Shown one piece after another: positions 20,800 through 63,511 of a DNA stretch of 64,000 nucleotides (the stretch's first letter is position 1; each line of letters starts with the position of its first letter). Position numbers and translations under genes: made by a program. The stretch is from positions 124,001 to 188,000 of IMG/VR virus record IMGVR_UViG_3300046559_001153; one strand, 5' to 3'. Under the pieces are notes generated by a model, which was not told the DNA's origin, did not search any database, and saw nothing but the letters and a program-made list of their open reading frames with translations.

Positions 20800-22620
20800 A
20801 TGCCGATGGAGTCACAGGCACAACGTGCCTACTTGCATATTCACCACCCGCAGATTGCGGCTGAATTTGAAGCGGCCACCCCCAAGGGGAAGAAGCTGCC
20901 CAAGCACGTGAAGAAGAAAGCCGACGAGTCTCCGTCCGCCGTTCATCTGCAGCAGTTCATGCCAACGCAGCATAGACGGGCTTTGACTGAGAACGAATTG
21001 TTAGATGTGCATCGCGGCCAAAAACAATGGCTCCCGTCGATCTTTCAGTCTTACGGGACTCCCCTGCCTTCGATGCTGGCTTCGCCGTGGCGACAAGGTC
21101 TGCTGGCCGGACTGGCCGGGGCTGGTGTTGGCGGACTGGCCGGTGCGTCAATCGGGGCCGGACGCGACGGATCGCCTATTGGGGCTGGCGTAGGCGCCGC
21201 ATTGGGGGCTCTGGGCCTTGGCGGGACCGCCGGGCTGGTGACTGGTTTGAGCCGATCAGCCAAGAACGAGGGCATCATCGAAATGATGAAACGTCTGCCC
21301 GAGAACGCGGTCAAGCGAGATCTGCTGTCTGACCCGGCGTACCAGGCGGACATTAAGCGAGAGAATGACGCTGACAGCATGAATCAGTTCATGTCCGTGA
21401 TGTCGCCGCACAGCATGATGGACTTGGGGCATCCGTCCAATCTGACGATGGGCAAATGGTCCTTTGAAGAAATCGGGCAGAAAGCGGCTCTCTACGGGCC
21501 GAAAGGCTGTCCGGTTCCCGGTTGCACTGAAGGCAATCCCTGCCCCAGTTGCCTGGAGCAGGAAGTAGAAGAGAAGCAATCGGCCAGCAACGATTTAATG
21601 GCTACCGTTTCGTCGCTTATGAAGGAACGCGGCCCGCTGTTTGGTGGAGCCGGCATGGCTTTGGGTGGTCTGGTGGGGGCTGCGGGGGCATCGCCGGGGC
21701 GAGGCGGTGTAGAGACAATACGTGGTGCTGCCCACGGCGGTTTGATGGGGCTTGGGACCGTGGCCGGGGCGGCAGCTGGGGGCAATATCGGTGCTGTGTA
21801 TTCGATTGGAAACAAAGCCCTGCATCCTATTGCCGGTGAGGATTACACTGGACTGGGAACGATGGCCGGGGCAGGACTTGGTGCTTTATTGGCACATCAC
21901 GCTGCCAATGAACTTACAGGACCAATGTTCGAGCCGCACGAAGAAAAGAAAGAGGCCCATGTCCTGACCGAGGGTGAACGGGCCAGTATGCCCAAGTCGG
22001 AGTTCGCTCATCCGCAGCACGCCAAGACCAAGAAACAAAAAGAGGAACCAGGCGGTTACCCGGTGCCGGACAAACAGCATGCTCGATCGGCTTTGGGCTT
22101 TGCGGCCATGCATCATGGAAAAGACTCAGCCATCTACCGACAGGTCAAAGCCAAGGTAGAAGCCAAATTCGGCAAGAAGTCGAATGCGTTCGTCACGTCA
22201 CAGCCGCTGGCTCCCGCCGCCATGCACAATCCATTCGCGGGTGCCACGGCTGCTCCTCCGGCGATGTCCCACCCCGGGCCTGGTCTAGGGTCCGATCCAT
22301 TTCACGTCCTGGGCGGCATGGCAGCTCAGCACGGGATCGGGGCACATGAGTTCACGAACAACATGGCCGCCGGTGACCCGTTCGGTGTGCACGGTGTGCC
22401 TGTCGGTGGCAAGAACCCATTTGCTGCTCCCTCACCAGCGGCAGCCAGGTGGTTGAGCACGGTAAATCCGTTCGCCCCCGCTCCGCCGCAGGCGGCCAAT
22501 TCGGGTTGGGGCAAACACATTGCCGATCACGGATGGAAGTACGGATTGGGTGCAGCGGCCGCGGGTGCTTTGCTGTATCATCTGGCGAACCGGAAGAAAG
22601 AACAGCCGCAGTACGTCTGA
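20800..22620 (+). CDS. Modular putative virion/internal protein with glycine-zipper segments and a DUF6582-like module
   Basis: N-terminal MPMESQAQRAYL..HP.IA.EF...TPKGKKLP module, GxxxG zippers, and LTEGERASMPKSEFAHP...YPVPDKQHARSAL. Confidence 0.75.
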   Translation: MPMESQAQRAYLHIHHPQIAAEFEAATPKGKKLPKHVKKKADESPSAVHLQQFMPTQHRRALTENELLDVHRGQKQWLPSIFQSYGTPLPSMLASPWRQGLLAGLAGAGVGGLAGASIGAGRDGSPIGAGVGAALGALGLGGTAGLVTGLSRSAKNEGIIEMMKRLPENAVKRDLLSDPAYQADIKRENDADSMNQFMSVMSPHSMMDLGHPSNLTMGKWSFEEIGQKAALYGPKGCPVPGCTEGNPCPSCLEQEVEEKQSASNDLMATVSSLMKERGPLFGGAGMALGGLVGAAGASPGRGGVETIRGAAHGGLMGLGTVAGAAAGGNIGAVYSIGNKALHPIAGEDYTGLGTMAGAGLGALLAHHAANELTGPMFEPHEEKKEAHVLTEGERASMPKSEFAHPQHAKTKKQKEEPGGYPVPDKQHARSALGFAAMHHGKDSAIYRQVKAKVEAKFGKKSNAFVTSQPLAPAAMHNPFAGATAAPPAMSHPGPGLGSDPFHVLGGMAAQHGIGAHEFTNNMAAGDPFGVHGVPVGGKNPFAAPSPAAARWLSTVNPFAPAPPQAANSGWGKHIADHGWKYGLGAAAAGALLYHLANRKKEQPQYV

Positions 22621-22638
22621 TAACTTTTCGAAAAGTTA
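22621..22638. promoter_or_regulatory. Palindromic motif, copy 2
   Basis: TAACTTTTCGAAAAGTTA (perfect palindrome), 12 nt before ATG 22651. Confidence 0.8.
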
Positions 22639-22650
22639 CGAGAGGGTAAA

Positions 22651-24291
22651 ATGACATTGATCGAGAAAGCAGCTCTGTGGGCCAACGCTGGCGTTAACGC
22701 GGCTCCTCATAGCTCATTTCACGGCTCTCCCGGCGGTTACGGCATGGGGGCCTTGGCCGCTCATAGCCCCGCGTACAAGCCGCCCATCGTGTCACCAACG
22801 CCCGGCATCCCGGCGACGTCGGCCGGTGTGGCCCAGGTTGCTCAACAGCAGGCCGCCCAGCACGGCATCGCTCCGCCGAAGATGGCCCATTGTGAGGGCG
22901 GCGCCATGTCGACCGAACCAGTCAAACCGCCGAAGATCAAGCCCTTCCGTTTGCAGGGGCAGGAAGCCTGGGACTCGCTCAAGAAGTCTGAGGCGTGGCT
23001 CAGCCTGACGCCGTTCGCTCAGGGGTTCTTCTCGAGATGTTTTGAGGACGGGCTACCGACCAGCCAGATCCAAGCTGGTATCCGAAAATCGGCAAACATT
23101 GATCCGGACATCTACGCCGAGCTTCAACAGGGATTCGAGAAGCTGGCATGGCCGGGGCCTGGCCTGCCCTCGAATGTCACAGCTGCGATTGGCCGCATGG
23201 GCGGTGTCGGTCGAGCAGTGCCCCAGTTGGCGAGCAGAGCAGTCCCTGGCGGTGTTCAAGCCCTGGGTGCTCTCCCGTTGAGTTCGACGCCGAGATCGCT
23301 CCCTATGGCAGCAGCGGCTTCAGCTAAGGTTCCGTTGTTGAATGCTGGTCCCAGCTTTGGCGGCCATGTGCCGCTGACCCCTAGCCCCGGTGTTCAGGCG
23401 TTAGGGGCAATGCCGTCGACCGGTTCTATTCCGTCAATGGCTCCGGCGGCGTCGGCCGCCGCGGCTACAGCTCCGGCTGTTGCCCCGTCAATGTGGTCTC
23501 GCGGCATGGGCATGGGCCGAACAGCGGTCAACACAGGAGCTCGTATGGGCGTTGGTGCGGGCCTCGGAGCCGGATTAGGGGCTGGTGCCCAGTTTGGCTA
23601 TCAGCATCAACAGGGCGACGCCTCAGGCGGTTGGGCAGCTCCCGCAGCGGGTGCTTTGGCTGGAGCCGCGTTGGGAGCCCGTGGCGGAGCCGGGTTCAAC
23701 ATGCTCAATAGCCGACTTGGCCGCGGTATTAGTGCCGCGGGGGCAGCGACGGTTCCGTTTACCGCAGGGGTGACGTTGGCCGGAAATAAGGCCCAGAGCG
23801 ACCTCAGCGGTATGTTGACAACGGCGGCACAAAAACACGGCGTGCAGCCCCAGTCGCTTTTGGCGATGGTGCAAGACCCGGCGAATTTTCAAAAACTGCC
23901 GCAGTCGGAACAGCAGGCCTTCATGAATTCGATGCAGCAGCACATCCCCCAGATGAACCCGATGCACGGTCTCAACGAAATGATGAACGGGATCCCCGGG
24001 CTGGGCCAATGGGACATGTGGAAGAACATGCATCCAGGCGGAAAGCTGATGGCTCTGGCCGGTCTGCTGACAGCTGGCGGCGGAATGATGGGTGGAAGCC
24101 CAGGCATGGCGGGGGCTGGTGGTCTGGCCATGTTGGCACCGTTCTTGTTTCACCACTTTATGAATGGCGGTGGGGGTGGAGCACCGGAAGGCGGAGCAGA
24201 AGCTCCTCCGGCAGCTCCAGGAGCCCAACCAGGTGCATGGGCGGCTGGCGGTGGTCCGGCCCCGCAGTTCCCACAACCGACAGGATTCTAA
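22651..24291 (+). CDS. Gly/Ala/Pro-rich putative virion internal protein with glycine zippers
   Basis: 546 aa; GVGAGLGAGLGAG and related segments; KxA motifs. Confidence 0.75.
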   Translation: MTLIEKAALWANAGVNAAPHSSFHGSPGGYGMGALAAHSPAYKPPIVSPTPGIPATSAGVAQVAQQQAAQHGIAPPKMAHCEGGAMSTEPVKPPKIKPFRLQGQEAWDSLKKSEAWLSLTPFAQGFFSRCFEDGLPTSQIQAGIRKSANIDPDIYAELQQGFEKLAWPGPGLPSNVTAAIGRMGGVGRAVPQLASRAVPGGVQALGALPLSSTPRSLPMAAAASAKVPLLNAGPSFGGHVPLTPSPGVQALGAMPSTGSIPSMAPAASAAAATAPAVAPSMWSRGMGMGRTAVNTGARMGVGAGLGAGLGAGAQFGYQHQQGDASGGWAAPAAGALAGAALGARGGAGFNMLNSRLGRGISAAGAATVPFTAGVTLAGNKAQSDLSGMLTTAAQKHGVQPQSLLAMVQDPANFQKLPQSEQQAFMNSMQQHIPQMNPMHGLNEMMNGIPGLGQWDMWKNMHPGGKLMALAGLLTAGGGMMGGSPGMAGAGGLAMLAPFLFHHFMNGGGGGAPEGGAEAPPAAPGAQPGAWAAGGGPAPQFPQPTGF

Positions 24292-51119: not shown

Positions 51120-51132
51120 GAGGACTACAAGC

Positions 51133-51333: not shown

Positions 51334-51354
51334 CCAATCGCAAGGAGGCGAAAC

Positions 51355-51681
51355 ATGTCTGCTTCTGTTTCATTGACTGATCTTCAGCAAGTTGCCGGTG
51401 CCGTGGGCGCTGTGAACGCCGCGGGCCACGCAGTTCCACTGACCGTTGTTCCTGTCTGGGCCGGTGCCGACCCAGCGGTCGTCAAGCTGATTCCGTCGGC
51501 TGACGGTCTGTCGTGCGAAGTTGTCGCAGTCGCCGTTGGCTCGACAGCCTTTACCGTCACAGCCACGTTGGCTGACGGTACGGTCATCACCGCTCCGTCC
51601 GTCCCGGTGACCGTTTCGGCCTCGGTAGCCGTCGGTCTGGTTGTGACCATTGGCACCCCGGAACTCATTCCGGCCAGCTAA
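51355..51681 (+). CDS. Ig-like domain protein (possible virion decoration)
   Basis: Val/Thr/Ala-rich beta-strand pattern VVKLIPSADGLSCEVVAVAVGSTAFTVTA; AAGGAGG RBS. Confidence 0.65.
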   Translation: MSASVSLTDLQQVAGAVGAVNAAGHAVPLTVVPVWAGADPAVVKLIPSADGLSCEVVAVAVGSTAFTVTATLADGTVITAPSVPVTVSASVAVGLVVTIGTPELIPAS

Positions 51682-51717
51682 TTCCTTTTTTGATTCAGTC
51701 CATTGGAGCCACTGGCT

Positions 51718-52455
51718 ATGTCCATCTTGAATCTTGCTGCGCTGCGAATGGCAAAAACGGCTGTTGCAAGCGCAAAGGTCGCGTTTACTCCAATGGATCC
51801 GTCACAGATGGCTGGCCAGCAAGGTGGCCAGCCCGGCGGTGACCCAGGTGCCGCACAGGGCGGCCCTGTCGATCCGTCACAGATCTCCGGGATCGGCTCG
51901 CAGTCTGGCTCGTCTGGTTCCGGCGGTGGCGCCGTAGACCAGGAAATGATTCGAAATGTCCTGCGACAAGAGTTACAGCAGATTCTGCCCCAAATGGGCG
52001 GTGGTGGCGGGGGTGCCGGTGGTGGCATGGGCCCCGGAGGCAAACCAATGAAGCTCGACGTTGGTGTTGAGCTTCACCGTTTGAACGTCATGCTGGCCAA
52101 GATCATCGACGCACTGGGTCTTCAAATCCCGGCGTCTGACATGGTCACGACCGAGGAACAGGGACAGCAACCCAGTGCACAGAATGCTGGCATGACGGGA
52201 GCTCCACAGCCCCCGGCCAGCTCGATATCGCCGATTCAGCCGATGCAGCCGGCCGGCCCCGGGCAACAGCAGCAGCATCAGCAGCATCAGCACCAGGCGA
52301 CCGACAAGGCGTCCCTGGCGGACGAGACGGCCCGCAAATTCATGGACCAGGGTGAGTGCAACTCGGAAGAAAGCATTCTCCCACTCTCGACGTCGGCCGC
52401 CGCGGCCAGCCTTATCATGCGTCACCTGCCCGCCATACAGGACCAGATTGCCTGA
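51718..52455 (+). CDS. Gly/Gln/Pro-rich putative virion or scaffold-like protein
   Basis: AKTAVAS, AKVAF and DKASL motifs; low-complexity linkers. Confidence 0.7.
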   Translation: MSILNLAALRMAKTAVASAKVAFTPMDPSQMAGQQGGQPGGDPGAAQGGPVDPSQISGIGSQSGSSGSGGGAVDQEMIRNVLRQELQQILPQMGGGGGGAGGGMGPGGKPMKLDVGVELHRLNVMLAKIIDALGLQIPASDMVTTEEQGQQPSAQNAGMTGAPQPPASSISPIQPMQPAGPGQQQQHQQHQHQATDKASLADETARKFMDQGECNSEESILPLSTSAAAASLIMRHLPAIQDQIA

Positions 52456-52694
52456 TGTACATCGAAGCCATCGAACGATTCGGTAAGCCGCCCGTGCGGT
52501 TGGAAGTCAGTCAGGTCGTCATTTACCGAGACGACGGAACCCCCATCTCGCTGGCCAGTTTGTACGGCCCCGATGGGGCCATTTTCGTTGAAACGGCCGA
52601 GGATCCGGAAAAATTCAACAAGGCCCTGCAGACACTGGGGATCGATAAAACAGTCATCGTCGACAACCTGGTCATGTCCGAACCAACCCAATAA
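52455..52694 (+). CDS. Small hypothetical protein
   Basis: TGATG-coupled; MYIEAIERFGKPPVRLEVSQVVIY. Confidence 0.65.
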   Translation: MYIEAIERFGKPPVRLEVSQVVIYRDDGTPISLASLYGPDGAIFVETAEDPEKFNKALQTLGIDKTVIVDNLVMSEPTQ

Positions 52695-52709
52695 CTTTTT
52701 ACAAAGTTA
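52692..52709. promoter_or_regulatory. Palindromic motif, copy 5
   Basis: TAACTTTTTACAAAGTTA (identical to copy 1), 22 nt before ATG 52732. Confidence 0.8.
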
Positions 52710-52731
52710 CAGAGACCAGCAGGTAGGCAAG

Positions 52732-55700
52732 ATGCCCGCGACCTTCATAGGGAAAATGGGTCAGCTGCTGGTCAACGAGGCTCTGCCCGAAGATCTGCGT
52801 AACGGTAAGACCCTGGATTCAAGGGGCTTGACCGACCTGCTGCGGGATGTGGCTGAACGTCACCCCGACAAGTACCGGGACATCTCACACAAGTTGACCC
52901 AGCTGGGTGAAGACGCAGCTCAGCAACTCGGCGGCTATTCGTTCGGGCTCAATGCCATGCGACGGGCCGGGTCAGCCAATGTCATTCGCGATCGCATCAA
53001 AAGCCAGGTTCAGTCACTGCTCGACAATGACAACCTGTCAGATGATGCACGCGAGTCCCAGATCGTCAAACTCCTGGGTCAGGCCCAGTCAGAACAAGAG
53101 AACGCCGTCTACGACGAGAGTTTGAAAGAGAACAATCCGATCGCCTTGCAGATCAAGTCAGGCGCTCGCGGCAAGAAGATGGCTCTCAATTCTCTGCGTG
53201 GGTCCGATCTGCTGTATGTCGACCATCGCGACCGGCCAGTGCCCATCCCCGTCCTGCGGAGTTACCCTGAGGGCCTGTCGCCGGCCGAGTATTGGGCTGG
53301 GGCCTATGGTGCTCGTCACGGCATTGTCAGTGTGAAGCTGGGCACAGCCCAGTCAGGCTTCCTGGCGAAACAACTCAATCAAGCGACCCACCGGCTGATT
53401 GTGACGCATGAGGATGACGCTCCGGTCGATACGGTCCGAGGCCTGCCAGTCCCTGTCGACGATAACGACAATGTGGGGGCCTTGCTGGCCCATCCGGCTG
53501 GTGGTTTTGGGCGGAACACGGTTCTGACGCCCAAGGTTCTGAAGTCCCTGCATGATGGCGGCATTCAGAGAATTCTGGTACGCAGCCCGACTGTTGGCGG
53601 GGCACCTGATGGGGGTCTCTACTCACGCGATGTTGGCATTCGAGAAACTGGCGGTCTGCCGCCCAAAGGAACGTTCTCCGGTCTGCAGGCCGGTCAGGCG
53701 ATCTCTGAGCCGTTGTCGCAGGCCACCTTGTCCGCCAAGCACGCAGGGGGCGTTGCCGGAGCATCCAAATCAGTGTCAGGCTTTGCCTGGATCAACGCCC
53801 TGGTTCAGATCCCCAAGGTATTTCCTGGCGGGGCAACGCATTCAGAAGTAGACGGGCGTGTGCAGCAGATTACCAAGGCACCTGGCGGCGGTTTGCACGT
53901 GCAGGTGAACGGACTGGAGCATTACGTGCCGCACGGGCTGGCTTTGACAGTTGCCCCGGGCGACGCGGTTGAAGCTGGCGACGTGCTCAGTGAGGGCATT
54001 CCCAGCCCGGCCGAGATCGTCAAGCACAAGGGAATTGGTGAAGGTCGCCGGTACTTTGTGGATGCCATGCGTAAAGCATTGACCGACTCTGGTGTTCGAA
54101 ACAATCGCCGAAATCTCGAACTCATCAGTCGTGGTCTGATCAATCACGTCGAGCTCGACGCGGAGATCGGCGAACACGCGCCAGACGACGTTGTCCCATT
54201 CGACACGATCGAACGGGATTACGAGCCGAGAGAAGGCAGTCACACGCTGCCTGTCCACCAGGCAATCGGCCAGTATCTCGAGAAGCCCTACCTGCACCAC
54301 ACGATTGGTACGAAGGTCAAATCGAGCATGTTGCCGGACTTCAAGCATTTTGGAGTTGAATCGGTTCACGTGCACAAAGATCCGCCGCTATTCCATCCGC
54401 TCATGGTTCGCGGTATGTACAACTTGCAGCACGACCCGGACGCCATGACAAGGAATCTAGGTTCAGGGCTGCAGGCAAGCTTCCTGGACTCGGTCCACCG
54501 TGGCGGCGGCAGCGACGAAAAGGGTACCAGCTATGTTCCCGGCCTGGCCCGTACTGTGGATTTTGGCCGCATTGGCGTTATCCGGCCGACTGTGGTTACA
54601 CCGCAGAGATCGACTATGAAAATCGCAGCTGGCAGCCCGATTGCCCCGGCTCTCGACCCGAAACCGGCTCCCATCAAACCACTGGCGCCACCACAGCCTC
54701 AAATAAAACCGATTGCTCCTCCACCGTCGCCGGCTTTGCAGGCGAAGCCTCAATCTGTGCTGGGCGATAGTTCGATCAACGGGTTCGGTGACTTCTTCCA
54801 TCATGCCGGTAATCTGCTGCGTGGGCCCGGGTACGACGCCGGGATGGCACCGGCAACTGCCGGTTTCAAGAACACGATGACGCCGCAGCAGTTTGGCCAA
54901 CAGATGCGGACTGATCTTCCCGGTCTGCCTAATCCGGTTGCACCAGCCGCACAACCCGGAGTATGGGATCAAGCGAAAGCCATAGCGCCTGGCCTGGCTA
55001 CCAATCTCGGGGTTAATGTAGCTGGGCAGCAGATAGCAAAAAATACGTTGGTGCGAGCCGTTCCCAGATTAGGAGTAGGTGCCGCCTCAAAGCTCTTGCC
55101 TCTCGGTATCGGCGCCGCAGTTGCCGAGCCGATTGGGTGGCTCGGTAAAAAGACCGGAATTCCAGGCTTCGAAAACGATGCAGCATATGACACCAATGCG
55201 TATCGTCAAGAGGCCGAAGGTTTGCACTACGGGATGCCGGCCGGCTGGCGTCAGGACACCAATCGACCGTGGTATATTCGAATGGGAGACTGGTTGGCCA
55301 ATGACGCAGGAACAGCCGTAATGCAGCCTCAGACGGCCGTCATGAACGCGTTTGGCAAGTCGAGCGATGACGCCTTGGGAATTCCTTCTCGCGACGAGAT
55401 GGGAGACTTATCCAAGCTCGAAACGGGCAAGCTCTATGACCTGTTTACACAGCTCCATAACGCCACCAAAGCCGGTCCCCACACTGATCTGAGGATTGGC
55501 GATCCGGAGCAGGGGCTGCACTCTTGGGCCGTGCCGAAGGGTTTACCCGAGTCTGGGAAGAAGCATCTGGCTGTCCACCAGCCAATTCACGAGCATTCCT
55601 ACGGGGGCTGGTCGGGCACGATTCCCGAGGGCGAATACGGGGCCGGTACGGTCAAGAGTCAGATCAAGGGCAAGGCCCTGGTGACCGAGTCGGGTCCGGG

Positions 55701-56883
55701 CAAACTGCATTTTACGACAGCTCACATGAAGCATCCCGAGCGGTTCACTGTGGTGGCGCCAAAAAGCTTCGGTGAAAACAATCACCTGCTGCTCAACACG
55801 ACGCCGACCGAGCCGCTGCCGTACCAGAAGATCCACTACAAGAAAGTTCCGACCGAACAGGTCGAAGGAAAGTTGAAGGAGTTAGAACCCGGTTCGTCGG
55901 TGCAGGCCAAGATTGACGGTGCATCGAGCCTGGTCAAACTGCTCAAGGATCAGCTCGAACTGTATTCGTACCGGGCATCAAAGCCGACAGGAAAACCAAT
56001 CATTCACACGGAGAAGGTGTTACATGGCCGGCCTCGGATTGAGATCCCTCCTGAGTACCACAACAGCATCCTGCGCGGTGAGTTACACGGGGTCAAGCAA
56101 GACTCCGAAGGAAAAGAAACGGTTATTCATCCCAGCGAACTTGGTGGTATCCTCAACTCAACGATTGCTCACTCGCTGGCAAAACAAGAGACCTCAGGCG
56201 TTCGGCTCCGTAACGCACTGTTCGACATTCAACAGGTTGGCAACACGCCAATTGACTTCTCCAAGACGCCATATTCTGAACGTCGGGAACACTTGAAGAG
56301 CATTCTGCCGTCGCTGCCGCAGGACATTTTTCACTTGACCGACGAAGCCAAGACACCGGAAGATGCGCTGAAGTTGTGGAAAGACATTGGTAGCGGGGAT
56401 CACCCGAAAACTGAGGAAGGAATCGTTATCCACTCTCCAACGGGCAAGCCCCAGAAGGCTAAGTACATTGAAGATCACGACGTTCACATCCGCGGTATTT
56501 TCCCTGGCGAAGGCCGTCTTGCTGGAACTCATGCCGGCGGCTTTGAGTACTCTGCTGAGCCTGATGGTCCTATTCTCGGCCGTGTTGGCACTGGCTTTTC
56601 TGACGATGTTCGTCGCCAGATGCATGATCGACCTGACGATTTCGTGGGGCGGGTTGCCCGGGTGAAGTCCCAGGAGAAGTTGCAGTCGGGTGCGTTGAGA
56701 GCTCCGGCTTATATCGCTCTCCACGAAGATTACCCAGTGTCGTCGGCTTTGAATAAGGCGGCCGAGCTAGAACGCGTCCGTCTGCGTGTGAAAGAATTGG
56801 CAGAGAAAAAGGCGACCGCTTCTCCAATTTCTCTGGCCAGAGAACGCCTTCAAGCTATCCGAGCGAAAAATTTGGGCCTATAA
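52732..56883 (+). CDS. rpoC: Fusion protein: RNA polymerase beta' C-terminal half + Pro/Gly-rich linker + LigD 3'-phosphoesterase domain + ATP-dependent DNA ligase
   Basis: Beta' motifs: KSGARG, SYPEGLSPAEY..GAYGARHG...TAQSGFL, GLQAGQAISEPLSQATLSAKHAGG. PE motifs: QLH...HTDLR, SWAVPKG, H..SY, GTIPEGEYGAGTV. Ligase motifs: KIDG, RGEL, LFDI, EEGIVI, KAK, GRVGTGFSD. Start moved to ATG 52732 (AGGTAGG RBS). Confidence 0.92.
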   Translation: MPATFIGKMGQLLVNEALPEDLRNGKTLDSRGLTDLLRDVAERHPDKYRDISHKLTQLGEDAAQQLGGYSFGLNAMRRAGSANVIRDRIKSQVQSLLDNDNLSDDARESQIVKLLGQAQSEQENAVYDESLKENNPIALQIKSGARGKKMALNSLRGSDLLYVDHRDRPVPIPVLRSYPEGLSPAEYWAGAYGARHGIVSVKLGTAQSGFLAKQLNQATHRLIVTHEDDAPVDTVRGLPVPVDDNDNVGALLAHPAGGFGRNTVLTPKVLKSLHDGGIQRILVRSPTVGGAPDGGLYSRDVGIRETGGLPPKGTFSGLQAGQAISEPLSQATLSAKHAGGVAGASKSVSGFAWINALVQIPKVFPGGATHSEVDGRVQQITKAPGGGLHVQVNGLEHYVPHGLALTVAPGDAVEAGDVLSEGIPSPAEIVKHKGIGEGRRYFVDAMRKALTDSGVRNNRRNLELISRGLINHVELDAEIGEHAPDDVVPFDTIERDYEPREGSHTLPVHQAIGQYLEKPYLHHTIGTKVKSSMLPDFKHFGVESVHVHKDPPLFHPLMVRGMYNLQHDPDAMTRNLGSGLQASFLDSVHRGGGSDEKGTSYVPGLARTVDFGRIGVIRPTVVTPQRSTMKIAAGSPIAPALDPKPAPIKPLAPPQPQIKPIAPPPSPALQAKPQSVLGDSSINGFGDFFHHAGNLLRGPGYDAGMAPATAGFKNTMTPQQFGQQMRTDLPGLPNPVAPAAQPGVWDQAKAIAPGLATNLGVNVAGQQIAKNTLVRAVPRLGVGAASKLLPLGIGAAVAEPIGWLGKKTGIPGFENDAAYDTNAYRQEAEGLHYGMPAGWRQDTNRPWYIRMGDWLANDAGTAVMQPQTAVMNAFGKSSDDALGIPSRDEMGDLSKLETGKLYDLFTQLHNATKAGPHTDLRIGDPEQGLHSWAVPKGLPESGKKHLAVHQPIHEHSYGGWSGTIPEGEYGAGTVKSQIKGKALVTESGPGKLHFTTAHMKHPERFTVVAPKSFGENNHLLLNTTPTEPLPYQKIHYKKVPTEQVEGKLKELEPGSSVQAKIDGASSLVKLLKDQLELYSYRASKPTGKPIIHTEKVLHGRPRIEIPPEYHNSILRGELHGVKQDSEGKETVIHPSELGGILNSTIAHSLAKQETSGVRLRNALFDIQQVGNTPIDFSKTPYSERREHLKSILPSLPQDIFHLTDEAKTPEDALKLWKDIGSGDHPKTEEGIVIHSPTGKPQKAKYIEDHDVHIRGIFPGEGRLAGTHAGGFEYSAEPDGPILGRVGTGFSDDVRRQMHDRPDDFVGRVARVKSQEKLQSGALRAPAYIALHEDYPVSSALNKAAELERVRLRVKELAEKKATASPISLARERLQAIRAKNLGL

Positions 56884-56904: not shown

Positions 56905-57111
56905 ATGAGTCTGACCTGGATACTGTACTGGATCTTTGTCGGAATTTTCGTGCTTGGGGATACAGGTTGGATGATCTGGGCAATGAACCAGGGGACCGGT
57001 CAAGCGATGCCTCCGACGATTTTGCCGCTCATAGTAGGTATTCTCGGTGTTGGATTTTTTGTCGTTGTCGCTGTCATCATCATCGGAGTGAGAGCGTTAC
57101 TCGGGCCGTAA
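56905..57111 (+). CDS. Small membrane protein (2 TM)
   Basis: Two strongly hydrophobic helices; GAAAGGA RBS. Confidence 0.7.
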   Translation: MSLTWILYWIFVGIFVLGDTGWMIWAMNQGTGQAMPPTILPLIVGILGVGFFVVVAVIIIGVRALLGP

Positions 57112-57150: not shown

Positions 57151-59652
57151 ATGTCCATTCTGCTTGCAGGTAGCCAGTCGCTCGCGAAACGCGCTAACAT
57201 CGGCGGCGATCCTGAAGGGAACTTCGAACAATCGTTCGCCTCGCTGGGCTATAACTTCCTGAGTGAAAAAGCCCCCAGGCTGCTCGAGCACATGCTGGGC
57301 TTCCAGCTGCTTGACCGCAACGACGACATGTCACGAGCTGTCGGCGTTTATGGTTTCCAGGCTGATACCAAGCGACTGTACATGCCTTTGTTTTTCCTGA
57401 ATGGGGAACTTCGCGGCCAGGAATTGCTCTTCGTTCAGAACAAGGACGAGGGGCAGTTTGTCCCCATGAAGGAGAACTGGGTCAACTTCCTGCTCAGCAA
57501 GTCGCCACACATCATGGGCGAGGCGTCGCAGAAGGATGTGTTCCAGATGGGCGGGATGTGGCCGGACCTGCGTCCATTCACGAACGCTTACCGCGGTAGC
57601 AAATACTCATGCGACATGCCGCGTATCCAAGAGTGGGCCAAGCCGTTCATGCCCGTCTATGCTCGTCTCTGTACGACCAACCCTCTGCGTGACACTCGTT
57701 ACGCGAAGATCGCGACAGCCCAAAACCTGCTGAGCGAATCTCCGATGGCCGTGAAAATGGCCATCGATCTGTGTGACCGATTCCCGAACGTCAAGGCGGC
57801 CATGCACCGGTGTTACGGAGCGGACGTCTTTGAGAAGGCTCTACTGACCATCAAAGCCCGACTGACCAAAGAGGCGTCGGATCGAGGCAGCATTCTCTCG
57901 TTCAAGCCGCAGAAGGTGGCAGTCGCGCGTTCCCGATCGAGCATACTGCCCGACCTGACCCCCCAGGACCCCGTTAAGCTGGGGGCTTTGAAGATTATGC
58001 GGGTCGATCCGAATGAACGTTTTACGCACAACATTCCCGATCGATCACGCGAAGAGGCCACTGGCGACACCCGCCGCGGCGCCGTCGTGATCACCGACAA
58101 ACGCTTGCCGCAGGACAAGTCGACCCTGTACAACACGGCGATCCATACGGCCTACACGAATCCAACTCGATCTTCCCTGGCTGAGGTGCTGGCCGGGGCC
58201 GGCAAGTTCGAGAAGTGCCTGATCATCCATCGCCCATACTCCGGCAAGGGGCAGCACACCTTCGTGACTGTCGTCCGAGCGGAAGGTCAAAGTTCAGCCC
58301 GCAACTGGATCAACTCGGACGCTACGAACATTTACGTTCGCCAGCCGATTGAAAGCCAGTTCGATTTCAAGACCTGGTTCGACGGATTGTCGTCCGCCAA
58401 GATGACCAAGGACAGCACGTATGTCGCGCTGACCGGTGACGGCCGCGGTACATTGCCGTTTACAGTGAACAGCGTTCTGGATGATGACTGTTACCGAGTC
58501 CAATACGAGACCGGACACAAGCGACCACAGTACGCTCACATGTCGCGAAATTACAGCACCAACGGATTGGGCGACCGCGACACGCCGCCCAATCCGTCGG
58601 GTTACACGGATTACAATGCCTTGCTGCATTTGAACGGCCGTAAGGGCTCCAGCATCCACGCCGTTGGTGGCGAACTGTGGATCCCCGACAGCGCTAAAAT
58701 CCTCAAGATCCAAGACCCATTTGACCCAGAAGATGACAGTGACGAAGACTCAATTTCGCCGCTCCAGCCTGGCAACCTGATTGACGTGCAGAATCAGATC
58801 TACCAGAAAACAGCGTCCCTCAAGCTCTGGACGGTTGGGTCAGACGAAATCGCTCTGTCGACAAAGTTTGGCACGCGCCGCATGAGCAAACAAGCCGCTT
58901 ACGTGGCGATGGTTGCTGACCTTGGGCTGGGGATTGATGATGCAGACGCGGCCATGGACAAAGTGACCAAAGCCGGTTCGGCCAAGTTCAGGATTCTGTA
59001 CGGACCGTTCTACCAGAAGCGGGCTGACGCGTGGCCCGGCTACGGCGGCGACCTGCTTGATCAGGGCCCGAGTGCTCCCCGAGAAGGGCCGCCACCGACC
59101 GGATCCGGCTTCCCGTGGTACGGCGGAGCGATCAACAAGTATCCGCAGGAGGAGTACCTGGAAGTTCCAGGACTCAATGCCTACTCAACCAATCCCTGGA
59201 TCTACGATCCCACTCGTATCCCCGATCCAGGGACTGGCCCCGGCGCCTACGGCACAGACCAGGCCGGGTCGGGAAGCTTCTCTCAGGGTCAGGATTCGTC
59301 ATCCCAGGGCGTCCAAAATGCGGCGGCATCTGGCCAGAAGGAAGTCTTCGATACGACCATCTTGAGCAACCTGCTCAACTCGGTTCGACAGGAGAGCGTG
59401 GTCGATCGCTACTTGAGCGACCTGATGACTGGGCTTGACCGAATCGGGCGTATTCTGTTCAGCTTCTACTGGCACATGGATGACGTCAAAGAGCACTACG
59501 GTGCGGCCGAGACGCCCGATCTCATCGATGCCATGCGAAATGCGTTTGAAGAATGCGGCGACGTCACGTTGAAACTTCGTCAGAACTCGATGAACCCTGA
59601 CATGGGTGAAATGGGATCGCCGAACGTTGAAGACGTGGCTCGTGCTGACTGA
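57151..59652 (+). CDS. Large conserved putative virion protein
   Basis: 833 aa with multiple KxA motifs (KRAN, KIAT, KEAS, KTAS, KRAD). Confidence 0.78.
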   Translation: MSILLAGSQSLAKRANIGGDPEGNFEQSFASLGYNFLSEKAPRLLEHMLGFQLLDRNDDMSRAVGVYGFQADTKRLYMPLFFLNGELRGQELLFVQNKDEGQFVPMKENWVNFLLSKSPHIMGEASQKDVFQMGGMWPDLRPFTNAYRGSKYSCDMPRIQEWAKPFMPVYARLCTTNPLRDTRYAKIATAQNLLSESPMAVKMAIDLCDRFPNVKAAMHRCYGADVFEKALLTIKARLTKEASDRGSILSFKPQKVAVARSRSSILPDLTPQDPVKLGALKIMRVDPNERFTHNIPDRSREEATGDTRRGAVVITDKRLPQDKSTLYNTAIHTAYTNPTRSSLAEVLAGAGKFEKCLIIHRPYSGKGQHTFVTVVRAEGQSSARNWINSDATNIYVRQPIESQFDFKTWFDGLSSAKMTKDSTYVALTGDGRGTLPFTVNSVLDDDCYRVQYETGHKRPQYAHMSRNYSTNGLGDRDTPPNPSGYTDYNALLHLNGRKGSSIHAVGGELWIPDSAKILKIQDPFDPEDDSDEDSISPLQPGNLIDVQNQIYQKTASLKLWTVGSDEIALSTKFGTRRMSKQAAYVAMVADLGLGIDDADAAMDKVTKAGSAKFRILYGPFYQKRADAWPGYGGDLLDQGPSAPREGPPPTGSGFPWYGGAINKYPQEEYLEVPGLNAYSTNPWIYDPTRIPDPGTGPGAYGTDQAGSGSFSQGQDSSSQGVQNAAASGQKEVFDTTILSNLLNSVRQESVVDRYLSDLMTGLDRIGRILFSFYWHMDDVKEHYGAAETPDLIDAMRNAFEECGDVTLKLRQNSMNPDMGEMGSPNVEDVARAD

Positions 59653-60136: not shown

Positions 60137-61171
60137 ATGCCTGTTCTCACCGACTTGGCCTACAAAGGGCCCGAACTCACTACTGACGACATGGTTTTTG
60201 GGGACGCGACCCTGCGGCCTGACTGGCGGTGGGAACGAGTCCTGGACATGGTCAACCATTCACCGTGCCCATTACGCAACAAGCGATTCGACGACTCGTA
60301 CGTCCGCACCATGCGACAGTACATGCTGCAGAACCGCGGCGACAACGAAGAGCGTAAAAAGAATCTGTTTTTCGAGTACCCGGGTTGCTACCACGCGTTG
60401 AAATTGCATCAGGATGTCGACGGGGCCGATATGCGATTGTTTCTGCAATCGCGGTTCCTGGCCAGACAATCCATTCCCGATATCGCGAGATACACGGGCA
60501 TGTTACCCATCTCGATTGAATGGTACGAGAAGCTGTTCTTCAATGTCTCGGACAGGATCAGCGATCAAGACTGGATCTTGCGGCATATCCTTGGCCCCGA
60601 AGCCAGCCGACAACTCAATAACTACGAACTGGCCATTAAAATGCTAGCTTACCACGGGGGTGTCAGCGTCCTTAACTTCATGCTGACAGGCTGTCGAGAG
60701 CTGGAACATCCGCAGACACCAGAAGAAGTCATCAACTATGTCACCGACTATGCCGTCGACGGAATCATCCGCAAAGCGGCTCTGGCGGTTTACTGCTACA
60801 CGCCCAACAAGTATAAAATAGAACAGCTGTTGGACATGGCTCGTCAGGCCAAAGCCGATATGAAGGCCAAGGAAGACGAGACAGATCGAATCGAAATGGT
60901 CGCGGGTGCTGTGCGACATACGTTAGAGGCGATCGAATTCATCAAGGGTGACATGGCTGAGGATTGGTTGAGAGCCAGGTCACCGCAGTTGCTTGAGTAT
61001 GACGGTTTTGCGGCCGAGTTACGCGATCAACAGGTTTACGCGGTCGTGACAGGCAATCTGGCGTCTGTCGAACACATGCGACACAGGAAGTTCCCGGAAG
61101 CACCGAAGCGCGAATCCAAGTTGCTAACAGCCAAGGATGGCAAGCATGAAGACCCTCTCGAAACAAGCTGA
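60137..61171 (+). CDS. Conserved hypothetical protein
   Basis: 344-aa ORF. Confidence 0.75.
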   Translation: MPVLTDLAYKGPELTTDDMVFGDATLRPDWRWERVLDMVNHSPCPLRNKRFDDSYVRTMRQYMLQNRGDNEERKKNLFFEYPGCYHALKLHQDVDGADMRLFLQSRFLARQSIPDIARYTGMLPISIEWYEKLFFNVSDRISDQDWILRHILGPEASRQLNNYELAIKMLAYHGGVSVLNFMLTGCRELEHPQTPEEVINYVTDYAVDGIIRKAALAVYCYTPNKYKIEQLLDMARQAKADMKAKEDETDRIEMVAGAVRHTLEAIEFIKGDMAEDWLRARSPQLLEYDGFAAELRDQQVYAVVTGNLASVEHMRHRKFPEAPKRESKLLTAKDGKHEDPLETS

Positions 61172-62414
61172 GACTCAGCTTCTGTCGGCTGTCAAAAACG
61201 TTGTCGGACACGTCGACAATGGGGATGACCCGACTGACGCCGTGGTCAAAGTGGCTCAAGAGCTGGAATTGCCCCGCGGGCATCTGCAGCTGCTTTGCAG
61301 CGCGTACAACACGGGTCGCGTGAACGCCCAGAGGAAGATGGCAGCTGCCAGCATCATGGAGCGGTTTGAGGATATCCCGCTGGCTGACCACGAGAAGGCC
61401 GCCCAACAGATCTGGCCTGACAAAATTGAAACACCGTCCGAGCGCCTGAGCAAAACAGCCGTCTCGGACGATTACCGAAAAGCTCCGCACTGGTTAGCAC
61501 CGTGTCTGACTAGCCCTCCTGCGCGAAAAGCAGCCAGTGCGGAGCCTCTTGTTCTTACCCCGGCGCAACGCAAAGACGCCGCCTGGAAGACGATCCTTGA
61601 CGGCCAACGCCGCATTCAAGACGTCCGTCCCAAGTCGTCGGCCGCCCGTGACAACATGGTCGCCTCGATGCAGACGCTGACCGGATACTTCAAACGGGCC
61701 AATTGTCTGCCGTTTTCCGAGGTGCATTACGCAGTCGCGTCAGATCCCGCGGCCGAAGCTCTGATGCAGGTCGTGGGTGCCAGCCTGGGACGTGAGAAGC
61801 AGGCGGCAGTTGTCCCCCGAGTGATGCACTCGGTTGTCTGGACAGAGGCCCCGTACACACTGATCAAAGAAGCCCTGGCCGCCTGCGAGTTGGCCGTTAA
61901 CGCCCGTCGTGAACTGGTTGAACTTGAAGCCAGTATTAAGACGGCCCGAGAGGAGGTATACGGCCCCTCTGGGGCCCATAAAAGTGGGTCTGAAAAAGTG
62001 GGGGCTGGAGGATCTATTTTCGGGACAGCGCTTGGAACCACTTTCGGGTCAACATTGCCTAAGCCCAAATCTACGGGCGAAAGAGTTGAGTCTGCTGTCA
62101 CCGCGTTAGACGATCCGGATCACGAAAACGCTATGCGTAACATCCAGATCACGGCCATGCTGCGAGACATGATGTCGAATGACGAAGTGATCAAGGGCTA
62201 CGAGCCGGAAGAGGTTCTGCACGCCTACAATCAAATCTCGCAGACAGCACCAACTGTCGCCATGCACTCGATCGCTCTCGGACCTGAGCTTCGATCTGTC
62301 CTGCAGCGCAACCGGGCACCGCACGAGACGTCACAACTGGTCGGTCTGGAGAAGGATCTTCGCGGACTACGGCCGCCACTCGGGGCGGCGCCTGAAAAGA
62401 AGGACACGAAATGA
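61146..62414 (+). CDS. Putative virion protein rich in KxA motifs
   Basis: KQAE, KMAA, KTAV, KAAS, KDAA, KRAN, EKQAAV. Confidence 0.75.
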   Translation: MKTLSKQAETQLLSAVKNVVGHVDNGDDPTDAVVKVAQELELPRGHLQLLCSAYNTGRVNAQRKMAAASIMERFEDIPLADHEKAAQQIWPDKIETPSERLSKTAVSDDYRKAPHWLAPCLTSPPARKAASAEPLVLTPAQRKDAAWKTILDGQRRIQDVRPKSSAARDNMVASMQTLTGYFKRANCLPFSEVHYAVASDPAAEALMQVVGASLGREKQAAVVPRVMHSVVWTEAPYTLIKEALAACELAVNARRELVELEASIKTAREEVYGPSGAHKSGSEKVGAGGSIFGTALGTTFGSTLPKPKSTGERVESAVTALDDPDHENAMRNIQITAMLRDMMSNDEVIKGYEPEEVLHAYNQISQTAPTVAMHSIALGPELRSVLQRNRAPHETSQLVGLEKDLRGLRPPLGAAPEKKDTK

Positions 62415-63511
62415 CGCCCGCAACGCCGCTGGAAGCCACGACGATCAAGGAAGCTGCCGAGATGCTGGCGAAGCGAATCGTTCTGATTCGTCTTACCAAG
62501 CAGGCGGCTGGTTTGTCGGACTACGTCGAGCCGTATGTGAACAAGGCAACCGAGTTCCTCGACAAGACAGCACCACAGGTTGGCAAATTCTACAGCGAGA
62601 ACGCGACGCCCATTCACGCCGGATTGGGTGGGGCTGCCTTGGGGGCAGCAATGGGTGGTCTCTCCGGTCTGACGAGCCCCGACGAGGATCGACGTAACCC
62701 GGGCCGAAGTGCCCTCATGGGCGGATTGGCCGGCGGTGCGGTGGGCGGGGGTCTCGGACTGTTAGCTCAGCACGGGCCTGCTCTGAAGAAGTTGTTTGGC
62801 GCATCGAAGTCGATCGATACGGCAAAGAGTGAGGCGGATGCCTCTGGCGGTTTGATCCGCCAGTATCTCCCTCCTATGAAGCCTGACGCGACGGATCCGA
62901 CTCGAGCTGGATTGCTGGCCCAGACGCTCGGTGGTGATTATGCTGGCACGACAGCCAAAGTAGTTGCCCCAGCCGCGATAGGGATCGAGAGCGGGATCGG
63001 GTTCAACAATTGGAGAAATGCTCACAATCCATTGACTACGAAAAATATCCGAACCGGTGCTAGCGAGTTTTTGGGTAAAAAGGATTTTGGCGGACTAGCC
63101 AGCACGCTGAATGTTCATCCAAATGTCGGATCGCCGTCAACCTGGATGGGTGCACCCGACGATATCGCAAAGAAAATGGAAGCAGCATTAACCAATTTGC
63201 AGACTGACAAAGCTCCATTTTGGGGCGGCGGGATACACTCCCCTCGAGGGATGGGCAGTTCCTACATGAAAGAGCTTGGCGGATTGCACGGTCCACCGGG
63301 CTGGTATGACAAAACAATGACAGCGATCGGCAACGCTGGAATGAAAGCCAACGCGGTAGAAGCCAGTTCAGCTGGCGGCATGCTAAGACGAGGCGCCGGC
63401 TTCGGCGGGCGTATGCTCGGATACGCGGCTTTGCCTGCTCTGGCCAGCTACTATCAACCACCCGTCGCTCCAGTTCTTAAACCCGGTCTGACAGATCTCC
63501 TGAAGAGATAA
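62411..63511 (+). CDS. Putative virion internal protein with glycine zippers
   Basis: KEAAE, KQAAG, GLGGAALGAAMGGLSG, GGLAGGAVGGGLG. Confidence 0.72.
   Translation: MTPATPLEATTIKEAAEMLAKRIVLIRLTKQAAGLSDYVEPYVNKATEFLDKTAPQVGKFYSENATPIHAGLGGAALGAAMGGLSGLTSPDEDRRNPGRSALMGGLAGGAVGGGLGLLAQHGPALKKLFGASKSIDTAKSEADASGGLIRQYLPPMKPDATDPTRAGLLAQTLGGDYAGTTAKVVAPAAIGIESGIGFNNWRNAHNPLTTKNIRTGASEFLGKKDFGGLASTLNVHPNVGSPSTWMGAPDDIAKKMEAALTNLQTDKAPFWGGGIHSPRGMGSSYMKELGGLHGPPGWYDKTMTAIGNAGMKANAVEASSAGGMLRRGAGFGGRMLGYAALPALASYYQPPVAPVLKPGLTDLLKR

What the first reader, a model, noticed from the sequence alone, without database searches (positions are those of the whole stretch)
20800..63511. Family of glycine-zipper, low-complexity proteins: possible ejected membrane-inserting complement
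Seen: ORFs 20800, 22651, 38077, 40044, 40961 and 62411 carry one to three GxxxG/GxxGxxG hydrophobic helices without signal peptides, set between Pro/Ala/Met-rich linkers and KxA sites. Inference: after processing they would yield many short membrane-active peptides. These could build a DNA-entry channel or a protective membrane compartment for the genome and RNAP, by analogy with the early infection vesicles of phiKZ-like phages.
Basis: inference. Interest (0 to 1): 0.6.

Follow-up and report, generated by a model that had tools for sequence, protein, structure and literature searches.

The report
Glycine-zipper proteins in a jumbo-phage head module
An uncultivated 224-kb phage encodes several unrelated glycine-zipper proteins, most of them among its head and RNA-polymerase genes and carrying a conserved Lys-x-Ala motif, so they are probably processed capsid-cargo proteins, but nothing yet shows that they enter membranes.

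Summary
The six ORFs exist as described. P1, P2, P3 and P6 carry more GxxxGxxxG zippers than shuffled copies (p<=0.009). P4 and P5 have only Gly/Ala-rich uncharged segments. The six are not a homologous family.

P3, P4 and P5 are core genes beside a beta/beta' RNA polymerase inside the head-gene block, present in about 50-58 of 61 related metagenomic phage contigs. P6 is an ORFan in the same block. P1 and P2 form a separate two-gene unit among methyltransferase and sugar-modification genes.

- K-x-A is the most often conserved X.Y pair in nine head-module families (25 columns, next 13).
- It lies within the first 45 residues of 12/20 head-module proteins against 35/262 elsewhere.
- It is invariant in the capsid protein N-arm in all five genomes compared.
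- In P3 it sits in a disordered linker before a confidently modelled zipper hairpin.

In the distant relative Salmonella phage Arash, analogous glycine-zipper proteins and the polymerase were detected in virions.

Best reading: processed capsid cargo, possibly ejected. Membrane insertion, channel or vesicle formation is untested. The zippers are only marginally hydrophobic, and no protease was found. This is a new variant of a known kind, of moderate interest.

The parts
20672..20760 (+). GC hairpin plus T-run, the 13-mer TTTAGCTATCAGC and a sigma70-like -35/-10, upstream of P1
   Evidence: Read. The 13-mer occurs exactly three times in the genome, always intergenic after a hairpin: window 20709, 51068 and 70775.
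20800..22620 (+). P1, 606 aa. Gly-zipper helices at aa 99-151 and 278-338, a Cys4 motif at about aa 237-251, a phrog_16160 domain at aa 388-459, NPF/DPF-rich tail and a C-terminal uncharged segment. Conserved K-x-A at aa 39-41 and 384-386.
22651..24291 (+). P2, 546 aa. Low-complexity Pro/Ala/Gly protein with a conserved central domain (aa about 97-166, F..GF..RC.E.G motif), Gly-zipper segments at aa 299-322 and 466-510, and conserved K-x-A at aa 6-8, 77-79 and 146-148.
37406..38080 (+). 2H phosphoesterase (2H-SAK). Its stop overlaps the P3 start. A conserved neighbour.
38077..39141 (+). P3, 354 aa, the core Gly-zipper protein of the clade. N-domain aa 1-90, K98-L-A100 in a disordered linker (nt 38368-38376), zipper hairpin aa 129-189 (nt 38461-38643) and C-terminal zipper helices aa 296-351.
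40044..40553 (+). P4, 169 aa. Conserved N-terminal helical motif, K38-S-A40, and one Gly/Ala-rich segment at aa 91-118.
40550..40954 (+). Conserved 134-aa protein between P4 and P5, without a zipper
40961..41659 (+). P5, 232 aa. Three Gly-containing uncharged helices (aa 24-46, 96-110, 173-195) separated by conserved K-x-A at aa 77-79 and 167-169.
41675..46093 (+). RNA polymerase beta fused to the N-terminal part of beta'
46106..51681 (+). Block of small genes absent from relatives, which splits the polymerase genes
51703..52455 (+). 250-aa conserved Pro/Gly-rich protein with K-x-A at aa 18-20 and 25-27. It has poly-Gly runs, not a true zipper.
52573..56883 (+). RNA polymerase beta' C-terminal part fused to LigD phosphoesterase and ATP-dependent DNA ligase
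56905..57111 (+). 68-aa ORF with a classical hydrophobic TM helix, used as the hydrophobicity control
57151..59652 (+). 833-aa conserved head-module protein. Its C-terminus is similar to the abundant Arash virion protein gp218. It has 9 K-x-A, 7 of them conserved.
61137..62414 (+). 425-aa K-x-A-rich, scaffold-like protein with 11 sites, 10 of them conserved
62411..63511 (+). P6, 366 aa, an ORFan. K-x-A at aa 13, 30 and 52; zipper helices at aa 64-125 (nt 62600-62785).
63518..64000 (+). Start of an 871-aa K-x-A-rich head protein (similar to Arash gp222) that carries an intein. It runs beyond the window.

Best explanation
The window is part of a complete 224-kb phage genome from an uncultivated clade. 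In this clade the single multisubunit RNA polymerase is encoded inside the head-morphogenesis block.

P3, P4, P5 and P6 are non-homologous head-module proteins, made with the other capsid components. P1 and P2 may belong with them, with lower confidence. My proposal is that these proteins enter the prohead as internal cargo. A maturation protease that recognises hydrophobic-x-K-x-A would then cut off their N-terminal targeting pieces. The mature fragments keep conserved glycine-zipper helical hairpins. These helices are uncharged but only marginally hydrophobic, so the proteins could stay soluble while packaged and self-associate or partition into the inner membrane only after release.

After ejection with the DNA and polymerase they would help form or anchor the entry site.

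Shown here:
- gene position and conservation;
- zipper enrichment and conservation;
- conservation and N-terminal placement of K-x-A;
- virion detection of analogous proteins in Arash.

Inferred:
- packaging in this phage;
- cleavage at K-x-A;
- ejection;
- any membrane activity.
For: Genome:
- The window is G000:C1:124001-188000 of a 224,270-bp record with direct terminal repeats, 100% complete.

Head module:
- It is collinear with relatives G001 and G002 and partly with Arash. The order is P3, P4, w40550, P5, RNAP beta, w51703, RNAP beta', w57151, w60137, w61137, P6, w63518 and on to the major capsid protein.
- P3, P4 and P5 families are found in 49, 56 and 57 of 61 loci.
- In P3, 17 of 47 columns conserved at >=80% are Gly, and 7 of the 7 invariant columns are Gly or Pro.

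P3 model:
- AF2 gives the zipper hairpin aa 129-189 a pLDDT of 84-93.
- K98-L-A100 lies in a linker with pLDDT <50.

K-x-A motif:
- It is the top conserved X.Y pair, with 25 columns against 13 for the next.
- The logo is hydrophobic(-2)-x-K-x-A followed by A/E/S.
- It occurs within the first 45 aa in 12/20 head-module proteins against 35/262 others, Fisher p=5.6e-6.
- Counts are enriched only in head-module proteins and one other protein.
- It is invariant in the capsid protein N-arm in five genomes, including Arash and Vibrio phage D69.
- The P2 relative has a 76-aa longer N-terminus that ends at the same EK-x-A-LW junction.

Relatives with cultured hosts:
- Arash Gly-zipper proteins gp213, gp221, gp224 and gp4, and RNAP beta (the most abundant protein), were detected in virions (PMC10585845).
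- The D69 head module has the same features.

Gene linkage:
- Start/stop overlaps link P3, P4 and P6 to their neighbours.
- The P1 unit shares a unique 13-mer cassette with two structural-module units.
Against: - There is no proteome, N-terminal sequence or expression data for this phage or any close relative.
- No prohead protease was detected. Peptidase_S77 and S78 are absent, and head-module ORFs have no hits.
- The Arash zipper proteins show no significant sequence similarity to P1-P6, so that link is by architecture and position only.
- The Arash virion list of 116 proteins includes clearly non-structural enzymes.
- P1/P2 sit among methyltransferase, epimerase and glycosyltransferase genes. 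Apart from one Logan contig, only the N-terminal zipper domain of P1 finds kin: a 1034-aa protein and large ORFs in two relatives.
- P6 has no counterpart in G001.
- The zipper segments are too weakly hydrophobic to be called TM helices.
- Some conserved K-x-A, such as RNAP beta K76, lie inside conserved folded regions and need not be cut.
Confidence: 0.45

Rival explanations
1. They are non-virion, host-membrane-directed proteins made during infection. They could tether prohead initiation, the polymerase or replication to the inner membrane, or act in superinfection exclusion or lysis timing. K-x-A would then be a recognition or cleavage motif used in the cell, not in the capsid.
For: - P1/P2 form their own unit, after a terminator and with a sigma70-like promoter, among modification genes.
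- Zipper helices resemble those of small bacterial membrane or stress proteins. P6 gives a weak Gly-zipper_YMGG hit of 18.2 bits.
- A true 2-TM miniprotein sits in the same module.
- T4 prohead initiation is membrane-associated (established knowledge).
Against: - Segments scoring +3 to +4 kcal/mol are poor substrates for co-translational insertion, and there are no signal peptides.
- Gene linkage to K-x-A-rich, scaffold-like head proteins is tight.
- Analogous proteins are found in Arash virions.
Confidence: 0.22
2. They are soluble capsid-interior scaffold or 'inner-body' components. The glycine zippers only mediate tight helix-helix packing inside the prohead. The proteins are largely degraded at K-x-A and expelled during maturation, or they stay with the DNA, and they never touch a membrane.
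For: - K-x-A is densest in obvious scaffold-like neighbours: w61137 with 11 sites, w63518 with 14, and 15 in each of two G001 orthologues.
- Hydrophobicity is marginal.
- The precedents are T4 core and phiKZ inner-body proteolysis (established knowledge).
Against: - The zipper hairpins are the best-conserved parts of P3 and lie downstream of the conserved cut site, which suggests the mature product is what matters.
- (G/A/S)xxxGxxxG is characteristic of membrane helix packing (Kim et al. 2005, from memory).
Confidence: 0.2
3. The resemblance is only compositional. These would be unrelated Gly/Ala-rich low-complexity proteins of a 55% GC phage with no shared role, and K-x-A would be a by-product of Ala/Lys-rich helices.
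For: - There is no homology among the six.
- P4 and P5 fail the strict zipper test.
- K-x-A counts in the six are not above expectation.
- Several Gly-rich neighbours are plain Pro/Gly repeats.
Against: - The zipper excess over shuffles holds in four proteins.
- Gly columns are conserved at 25% mean identity.
- K-x-A outranks all 399 other X.Y pairs in conservation and is position-biased toward N-termini in head-module proteins.
- It is invariant in the capsid protein across distant relatives.
Confidence: 0.1

Closest known systems
T4 internal head proteins (IPI-III, Alt) with capsid-targeting sequences removed by the gp21 prohead protease
   Same: Small head-module proteins with a short N-terminal piece that ends at a conserved tripeptide site. 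They are co-encoded with scaffold-like, heavily cut proteins, packaged and injected with the DNA (established knowledge).
   Different: The motif here is hydrophobic-x-K-x-A, not (L/I)-x-E. No Peptidase_S77 was found and there is no sequence similarity. The T4 proteins are not glycine-zipper proteins.
phiKZ inner-body proteins and virion RNA polymerase, and the early-infection (EPI) vesicle
   Same: A jumbo phage with a multisubunit polymerase that is likely packaged, extensive head-protein proteolysis, and cargo ejected with the genome.
   Different: This phage has only one polymerase set, encoded as beta-beta' fusions. There was no PHROG match to inner-body families. The phiKZ cleavage motif is S/A/G-x-E. 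[quoted passage not shown] A chimallin homologue was not looked for.
Salmonella phage Arash (OQ632216) and Vibrio phage D69 head modules
   Same: The order portal or neighbours, RNAP beta, a small Gly-zipper protein, RNAP beta', a gp218-like protein, K-x-A-rich proteins, a Gly-zipper protein, capsid protein. K-x-A is invariant in the capsid N-arm. The Arash zipper proteins and polymerase were detected in virions.
   Different: The polymerase is only about 30% identical. The zipper proteins are not detectably homologous to P1-P6. Nobody has described the motif or the zippers in those phages.
Transmembrane glycine zippers of homo-oligomeric channels (MscL, KcsA, VacA) and Pfam Gly-zipper_YMGG/Omp
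   Same: (G/A/S)xxxGxxxG repeats on uncharged helices. P6 gives a sub-threshold YMGG hit, and a 1034-aa protein that matches P1 weakly (33% identity over 21% of P1) carries both Pfam domains.
   Different: No protein here reaches a Pfam cut-off. There are no lipoprotein or signal sequences. Membrane location is unknown. The oligomer prediction gave no verdict.
Herpesvirus assemblin-type cleavage sites (Ala at P1, Ser/Ala at P1')
   Same: Ala immediately before the presumed cut, followed by a small residue, with a hydrophobic residue upstream. Phage prohead proteases share the assemblin fold (recalled from memory, not tested).
   Different: Lys at P3 is specific to this clade. The protease itself was not identified.

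Membership tests
Pfam Gly-zipper_YMGG (PF13441) / Gly-zipper_Omp (PF13488) | Score at or above the gathering cut-off (28.9 / 25 bits) | tested here: not met
   P6 scores 18.2 and 14.4 bits. P1-P5 have no hit at E<=0.1.
Transmembrane glycine-zipper motif (sequence pattern only) | Repeated (G/A/S)xxxGxxxG on an uncharged helix, more than composition predicts | tested here: met
   Met in P1, P2, P3 and P6 (p<=0.009 against shuffles) but not in P4 or P5. The P3 hairpin is modelled as helices at pLDDT 84-93.
Transmembrane glycine-zipper motif (sequence pattern only) | Location in a lipid bilayer | not testable with these tools
   A rough hydrophobicity scale gives +3.2 to +4.4 kcal/mol, against -4.3 for a control TM helix.
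T4-type internal/cargo proteins | Encoded with head genes | tested here: met
   P3-P6 lie in the head module. P1/P2 do not.
T4-type internal/cargo proteins | N-terminal targeting peptide ending at a conserved protease site | tested here: inconclusive
   Conserved K-x-A near N-termini. Cleavage itself has not been observed.
T4-type internal/cargo proteins | Cognate prohead protease (Peptidase_S77/S78 or relatives) in the genome | tested here: not met
   No match in the whole genome. Head-module ORFs have no protease hits. The w57151 model has no fold match.
T4-type internal/cargo proteins | Presence in virions and ejection | not testable with these tools
   The only evidence is by analogy, from the Arash virion proteome.
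phiKZ inner-body proteins | Sequence membership in inner-body PHROG/Pfam families and S/A/G-x-E processing | tested here: not met
   No PHROG hit except phrog_16160 (unknown function) in P1. The motif differs.
Podovirus ejection proteins (T7 gp14-16, P22 gp7/16/20, N4 gp51/52) | Sequence membership | tested here: not met
   No Pfam or PHROG hits. No tblastn hit of P3 in 50,697 phage records.
   BLASTP finds nothing at E<=0.01. Family HMMs find no paralogues at 1e-4. The only link is a weak P4-HMM match to P2, E=0.0013 in a 282-protein database.

The most novel reading that the evidence does not exclude
A widespread, uncultivated clade of roughly 200-kb phages, with Arash and the Vibrio D-phages as distant relatives, packages its only multisubunit RNA polymerase together with a set of K-x-A-processed glycine-zipper proteins. 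On ejection these proteins would self-assemble in the host inner membrane into a conduit or a membrane-associated early-transcription compartment. That would be an origin of a protected entry site independent of the Chimalliviridae, built from injected membrane-active phage proteins.
Probability: 0.12. Interest if true: 0.8.

Novelty: new variant of a known kind. Interest (0 to 1): 0.45.

Why it matters
If these proteins are processed, ejected cargo, they give named candidates (above all the P3 family) for the unknown step by which large myophages with packaged polymerases establish a protected entry and transcription site. The step could then be tested in the cultured relatives Arash and the Vibrio D-phages.

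The K-x-A motif is a usable rule on its own. It predicts mature N-termini and the set of capsid-internal proteins across a whole clade of unannotated jumbo phages, and it points to an undiscovered maturation protease.

If instead the proteins are plain scaffold pieces, the finding reduces to a new cleavage motif in an ordinary head-assembly pathway.

Tried and rejected
- Near-identical DNA search of the polymerase gene in phage records: no match.
- Pfam and PHROG scans of the six proteins: only sub-threshold or unknown-function hits.
- Protein Atlas look-alikes for P3: scores <=0.82 and TM <=0.33, uninformative.
- Foldseek of the P3 model against PDB: nothing at E<=0.001.
- Word-index homologue searches: P1 gave 2 hits, P6 only itself, and the P3 profile gave 53 unnamed metagenomic proteins.
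- tblastn of P3 and w57151 against 50,697 phage records: no match.
- Hunt for the protease: Peptidase_S77 and S78 absent from the genome. PHROG/Pfam scans of all head-module ORFs and of the two genes after the portal were negative. The AF2 model of w57151 had no fold match by Foldseek or VIA-wide. A few weak trypsin-fold rows (E 0.02-0.3) are not backed by conserved His/Ser.
- Complex prediction of four copies of the P3 hairpin (aa 120-195): no verdict, score 0.01. This is neither for nor against oligomerisation.
- Profile and BLAST comparison of the Arash zipper proteins with P1-P6: nothing significant. The only traces were a weak K-Q-A-GLSD[FY]V resemblance between P6 and gp224, and the P5 HMM against gp202 at E=7e-4 in a tiny database.
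- Search for a shared promoter word in intergenic regions: no general motif, only the 13-mer cassette, which is absent from relatives.
- An N-terminal propeptide on the polymerase: its conserved K76-x-A78 lies in a conserved folded block, so it is not evidence of cleavage.

Full report
WHAT THE WINDOW IS

The 64-kb window is positions 124001-188000 of a single 224,270-bp virus record. The record has direct terminal repeats, is rated 100% complete and has 55.5% GC. It has no near DNA match among 50,697 deposited phage genomes.

Main genes found in the window:
- ORF 41675-46093 is an RNA polymerase beta subunit fused to the N-terminal part of beta'.
- ORF 52573-56883 is the rest of beta', fused to a LigD phosphoesterase and an ATP-dependent DNA ligase.
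- No second polymerase set is detectable.

The nearest cultured relatives are Salmonella phage Arash and Vibrio phages D69, D148 and D181, at about 30% polymerase identity. Sixty-one IMG/VR contigs, many of 180-235 kb, carry a polymerase about 50% identical.

THE OBSERVATION

I call them P1 (20800), P2 (22651), P3 (38077), P4 (40044), P5 (40961) and P6 (62411).

Against 2000 shuffles of each protein:
- Strict GxxxGxxxG zippers are strongly in excess in P1 (10 against 1.5), P2 (10 against 2.2), P3 (7 against 0.7) and P6 (5 against 1.1).
- P4 (1) and P5 (0) show no excess. They have only unusually long uncharged Gly/Ala-rich stretches.

None of the six begins with a signal peptide or lipobox. 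K-x-A tripeptides are present in all six.

Three corrections are needed:
- The six are not a family. BLASTP among them and against all 282 called proteins gives nothing at E<=0.01. Family HMMs find no paralogues. The only link is a weak match of the P4-family HMM to an internal F..GF..RC.E.G motif of P2.
- On a rough Hessa-type scale (values from memory) the zipper 19-mers score +3.2 to +4.4 kcal/mol. A real TM helix in the 68-aa ORF at 56905 scores -4.3. The zippers are uncharged but only marginally hydrophobic.
- Other Gly-rich proteins nearby (51703-52455, genome 190165, the portal C-terminus) are Pro/Gly repeats, not zippers.

GENE CONTEXT

tblastn against Arash, and against two complete relatives that I fetched (G001, G002), shows one collinear block. 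Its order is:
- 2H phosphoesterase (37406)
- P3
- a small ORF
- P4
- 40550
- P5
- RNAP beta
- [46106-51681, an insert absent from relatives]
- 51703
- RNAP beta'
- 57151 (similar to Arash gp218)
- 59687
- 60137
- 61137
- P6
- 63518 (similar to Arash gp222)
- two more K-x-A-rich proteins
- a 182-aa protein
- the major capsid protein (genome 192566, phrog_2522, similar to Arash gp226)
- tail genes

P3, P4 and P6 overlap the stop or start codons of their neighbours. So four of the six lie inside the head-morphogenesis block, next to the polymerase genes.

Iterated HMM searches find P3, P4 and P5 in 49, 56 and 57 of the 61 loci. P6 finds only itself, both in the loci and in the 5.8-billion-protein word search. 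G001 has two small opposite-strand ORFs at the P6 position.

P1 and P2 are different. They form a two-gene unit among DNA methyltransferases, an epimerase and glycosyltransferases. The unit is preceded by a hairpin terminator and a sigma70-like promoter.
- Their only close relatives are on one Logan contig, at 56% and 53% identity.
- The N-terminal zipper domain of P1 (aa 36-190) also occurs inside large ORFs of two relatives.
- The 13-mer TTTAGCTATCAGC occurs three times in the genome, each time after a terminator: upstream of P1, before the 51133-beta' unit, and before the tail genes. This hints at co-regulation with structural units, but it is weak evidence.

CONSERVATION OF THE ZIPPERS

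In the P3 family (36-50 sequences, mean column identity 25%):
- 17 of the 47 columns conserved at >=80% are Gly.
- The invariant columns are G144, G148, P156, G172, G176, G317 and G342.

AlphaFold2 with this alignment gives the following:
- an N-terminal domain at aa 1-90 (pLDDT 72-87);
- a disordered linker at aa 94-100;
- a helical hairpin at aa 129-154/163-189 with pLDDT 84-93;
- less confident C-terminal helices.

No solved structure resembles the model.

P5 keeps three Gly-containing helices and P4 keeps one. Between P1 and its relative, the first zipper pair is about 85% identical. The second zipper region keeps only its composition.

THE K-x-A MOTIF

This is the most solid result.
- Over nine head-module family alignments, K.A is the most frequently conserved of all 400 X.Y pairs, with 25 columns against 13 for G.G.
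- The pooled logo is a hydrophobic residue at -2, then x, K, x, A, followed by A/E/S.
- K.A lies within the first 45 residues of 12 of 20 head-module proteins against 35 of 262 others (Fisher p=5.6e-6).
- Counts are enriched only in 57151, 61137, 63518, 67472 and one protein near the terminase. In G001 two orthologues carry 15 sites each.
- It is invariant at about residue 30 of the capsid protein in this phage, G001, G002, Arash and D69, preceded by unconserved sequence.
- In P3 the nearly invariant K98 sits exactly in the modelled disordered linker.
- The P2 relative has 76 extra N-terminal residues, yet it rejoins P2 at the same EK-x-A-LW junction. Arash gp213 has PIEKQA-LW before its zippers.

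All of this fits a prohead-protease site. An Ala at P1 followed by a small residue recalls assemblin-type sites, though that comparison is from memory.

I could not find the protease. Peptidase_S77 and S78 are absent. All head-module ORFs lack protease hits. The AF2 model of 57151 has no fold match.

Not every K-x-A needs to be cut. The one conserved in the polymerase lies in a conserved folded block.

If the conserved sites are used, most zippers would remain in fragments of about 130-380 aa. Only P5 would give pieces of 60-90 aa.

EVIDENCE FOR VIRION LOCATION

This evidence is indirect. The Arash paper (PMC10585845) reports the following in purified particles:
- the polymerase beta subunit as the most detected protein;
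- beta';
- gp218;
- the proteins I identify as Gly-zipper proteins: gp213 (between the polymerase genes), gp221 and gp224 (upstream of the capsid gene) and gp4.

D69 has the same arrangement, including a 59-aa peptide that begins MDKVA and is followed by a zipper.

Two cautions apply. These proteins are not detectably homologous to P1-P6. The Arash list has 116 proteins, including reductases and helicases, and its authors themselves allow for carry-over.

MECHANISM

I consider it most likely (0.45) that P3-P6, and less surely P1/P2, are capsid-internal cargo trimmed at K-x-A. Their marginally hydrophobic zippers would let them stay soluble while packaged and associate with each other or with the inner membrane after ejection.

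Rivals:
- Membrane-directed proteins that never enter the virion (0.22).
- Purely structural scaffold or inner-body pieces with no membrane role (0.20).
- Compositional coincidence (0.10).

An oligomer prediction for the P3 hairpin returned no verdict and counts neither way. Nothing here bears on a channel against a vesicle. The analogy to phiKZ early-infection vesicles rests only on the likely packaged polymerase. Those vesicles are described as coming from the host inner membrane.

COMPARISON AND NOVELTY

Functionally the closest models are T4 internal proteins with capsid-targeting sequences and phiKZ inner-body proteins. Membership in either fails on sequence, on the cleavage motif and on the protease family. 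The Pfam glycine-zipper families are not reached either.

This is a new variant of a known kind. What is new is the K-x-A rule and the conserved zipper cargo candidates next to a head-encoded polymerase in a large uncultivated clade. Interest is moderate at 0.45.

Noticed in passing
window 52573-56883: The C-terminal part of RNA polymerase beta' is fused in one ORF to a LigD 3'-phosphoesterase and an ATP-dependent DNA ligase. In relatives G001 and G002 the beta' ORF is only 654-918 aa.
   Followed up: partly
window 41675-46093 and the whole genome: Beta is fused to the N-terminal part of beta'. It is the only multisubunit polymerase set in the genome and lies inside the head-gene block. A sigma-factor-like gene lies at genome 3541-4275.
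   Followed up: partly
window 63518-64000 and beyond (genome 187518-190133); genome 85850-88735: Two structural genes appear to carry inteins. The 871-aa gp222-like head protein has Hint_2 plus LAGLIDADG_3 at about aa 166-545. The 961-aa portal has a weak Intein_splicing hit at about aa 100-420.
   Followed up: partly
window 20709, 51068; genome 194775: The exact 13-mer TTTAGCTATCAGC occurs three times, each time after a hairpin terminator and before a sigma70-like promoter. It is absent from the related loci.
   Followed up: partly
window 6136-7356: An adenylosuccinate-synthetase homologue that best matches the PHROG annotated as PurZ (phrog_1211, 8e-52). This raises the possibility of 2-aminoadenine DNA. 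It was not examined further.
   Followed up: no
window 46106-51681: A 5.6-kb block of small genes splits the two polymerase genes and has no counterpart in any of the 61 related loci or in G001 and G002.
   Followed up: no
genome 38645-39850, minus strand (outside the window): A 401-aa protein with 13 K-x-A sites (expected 3.0), all in the same sequence context as the head-module sites, near the terminase gene. It has no Pfam or PHROG hit.
   Followed up: partly
window 37406-38080: A 2H phosphoesterase (2H-SAK, 3.5e-11) is a conserved neighbour whose stop codon overlaps the P3 start.
   Followed up: no
window 38077-39141: A shorter 247-aa form of P3, starting at M108, is on record in the protein collection. 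The conserved N-terminal domain (W10 nearly invariant) shows that the longer ORF is the real gene.
   Followed up: yes
window 56905-57111: A 68-aa ORF with a strongly hydrophobic TM helix lies between beta' and the 833-aa head protein. It was not examined in relatives.
   Followed up: no
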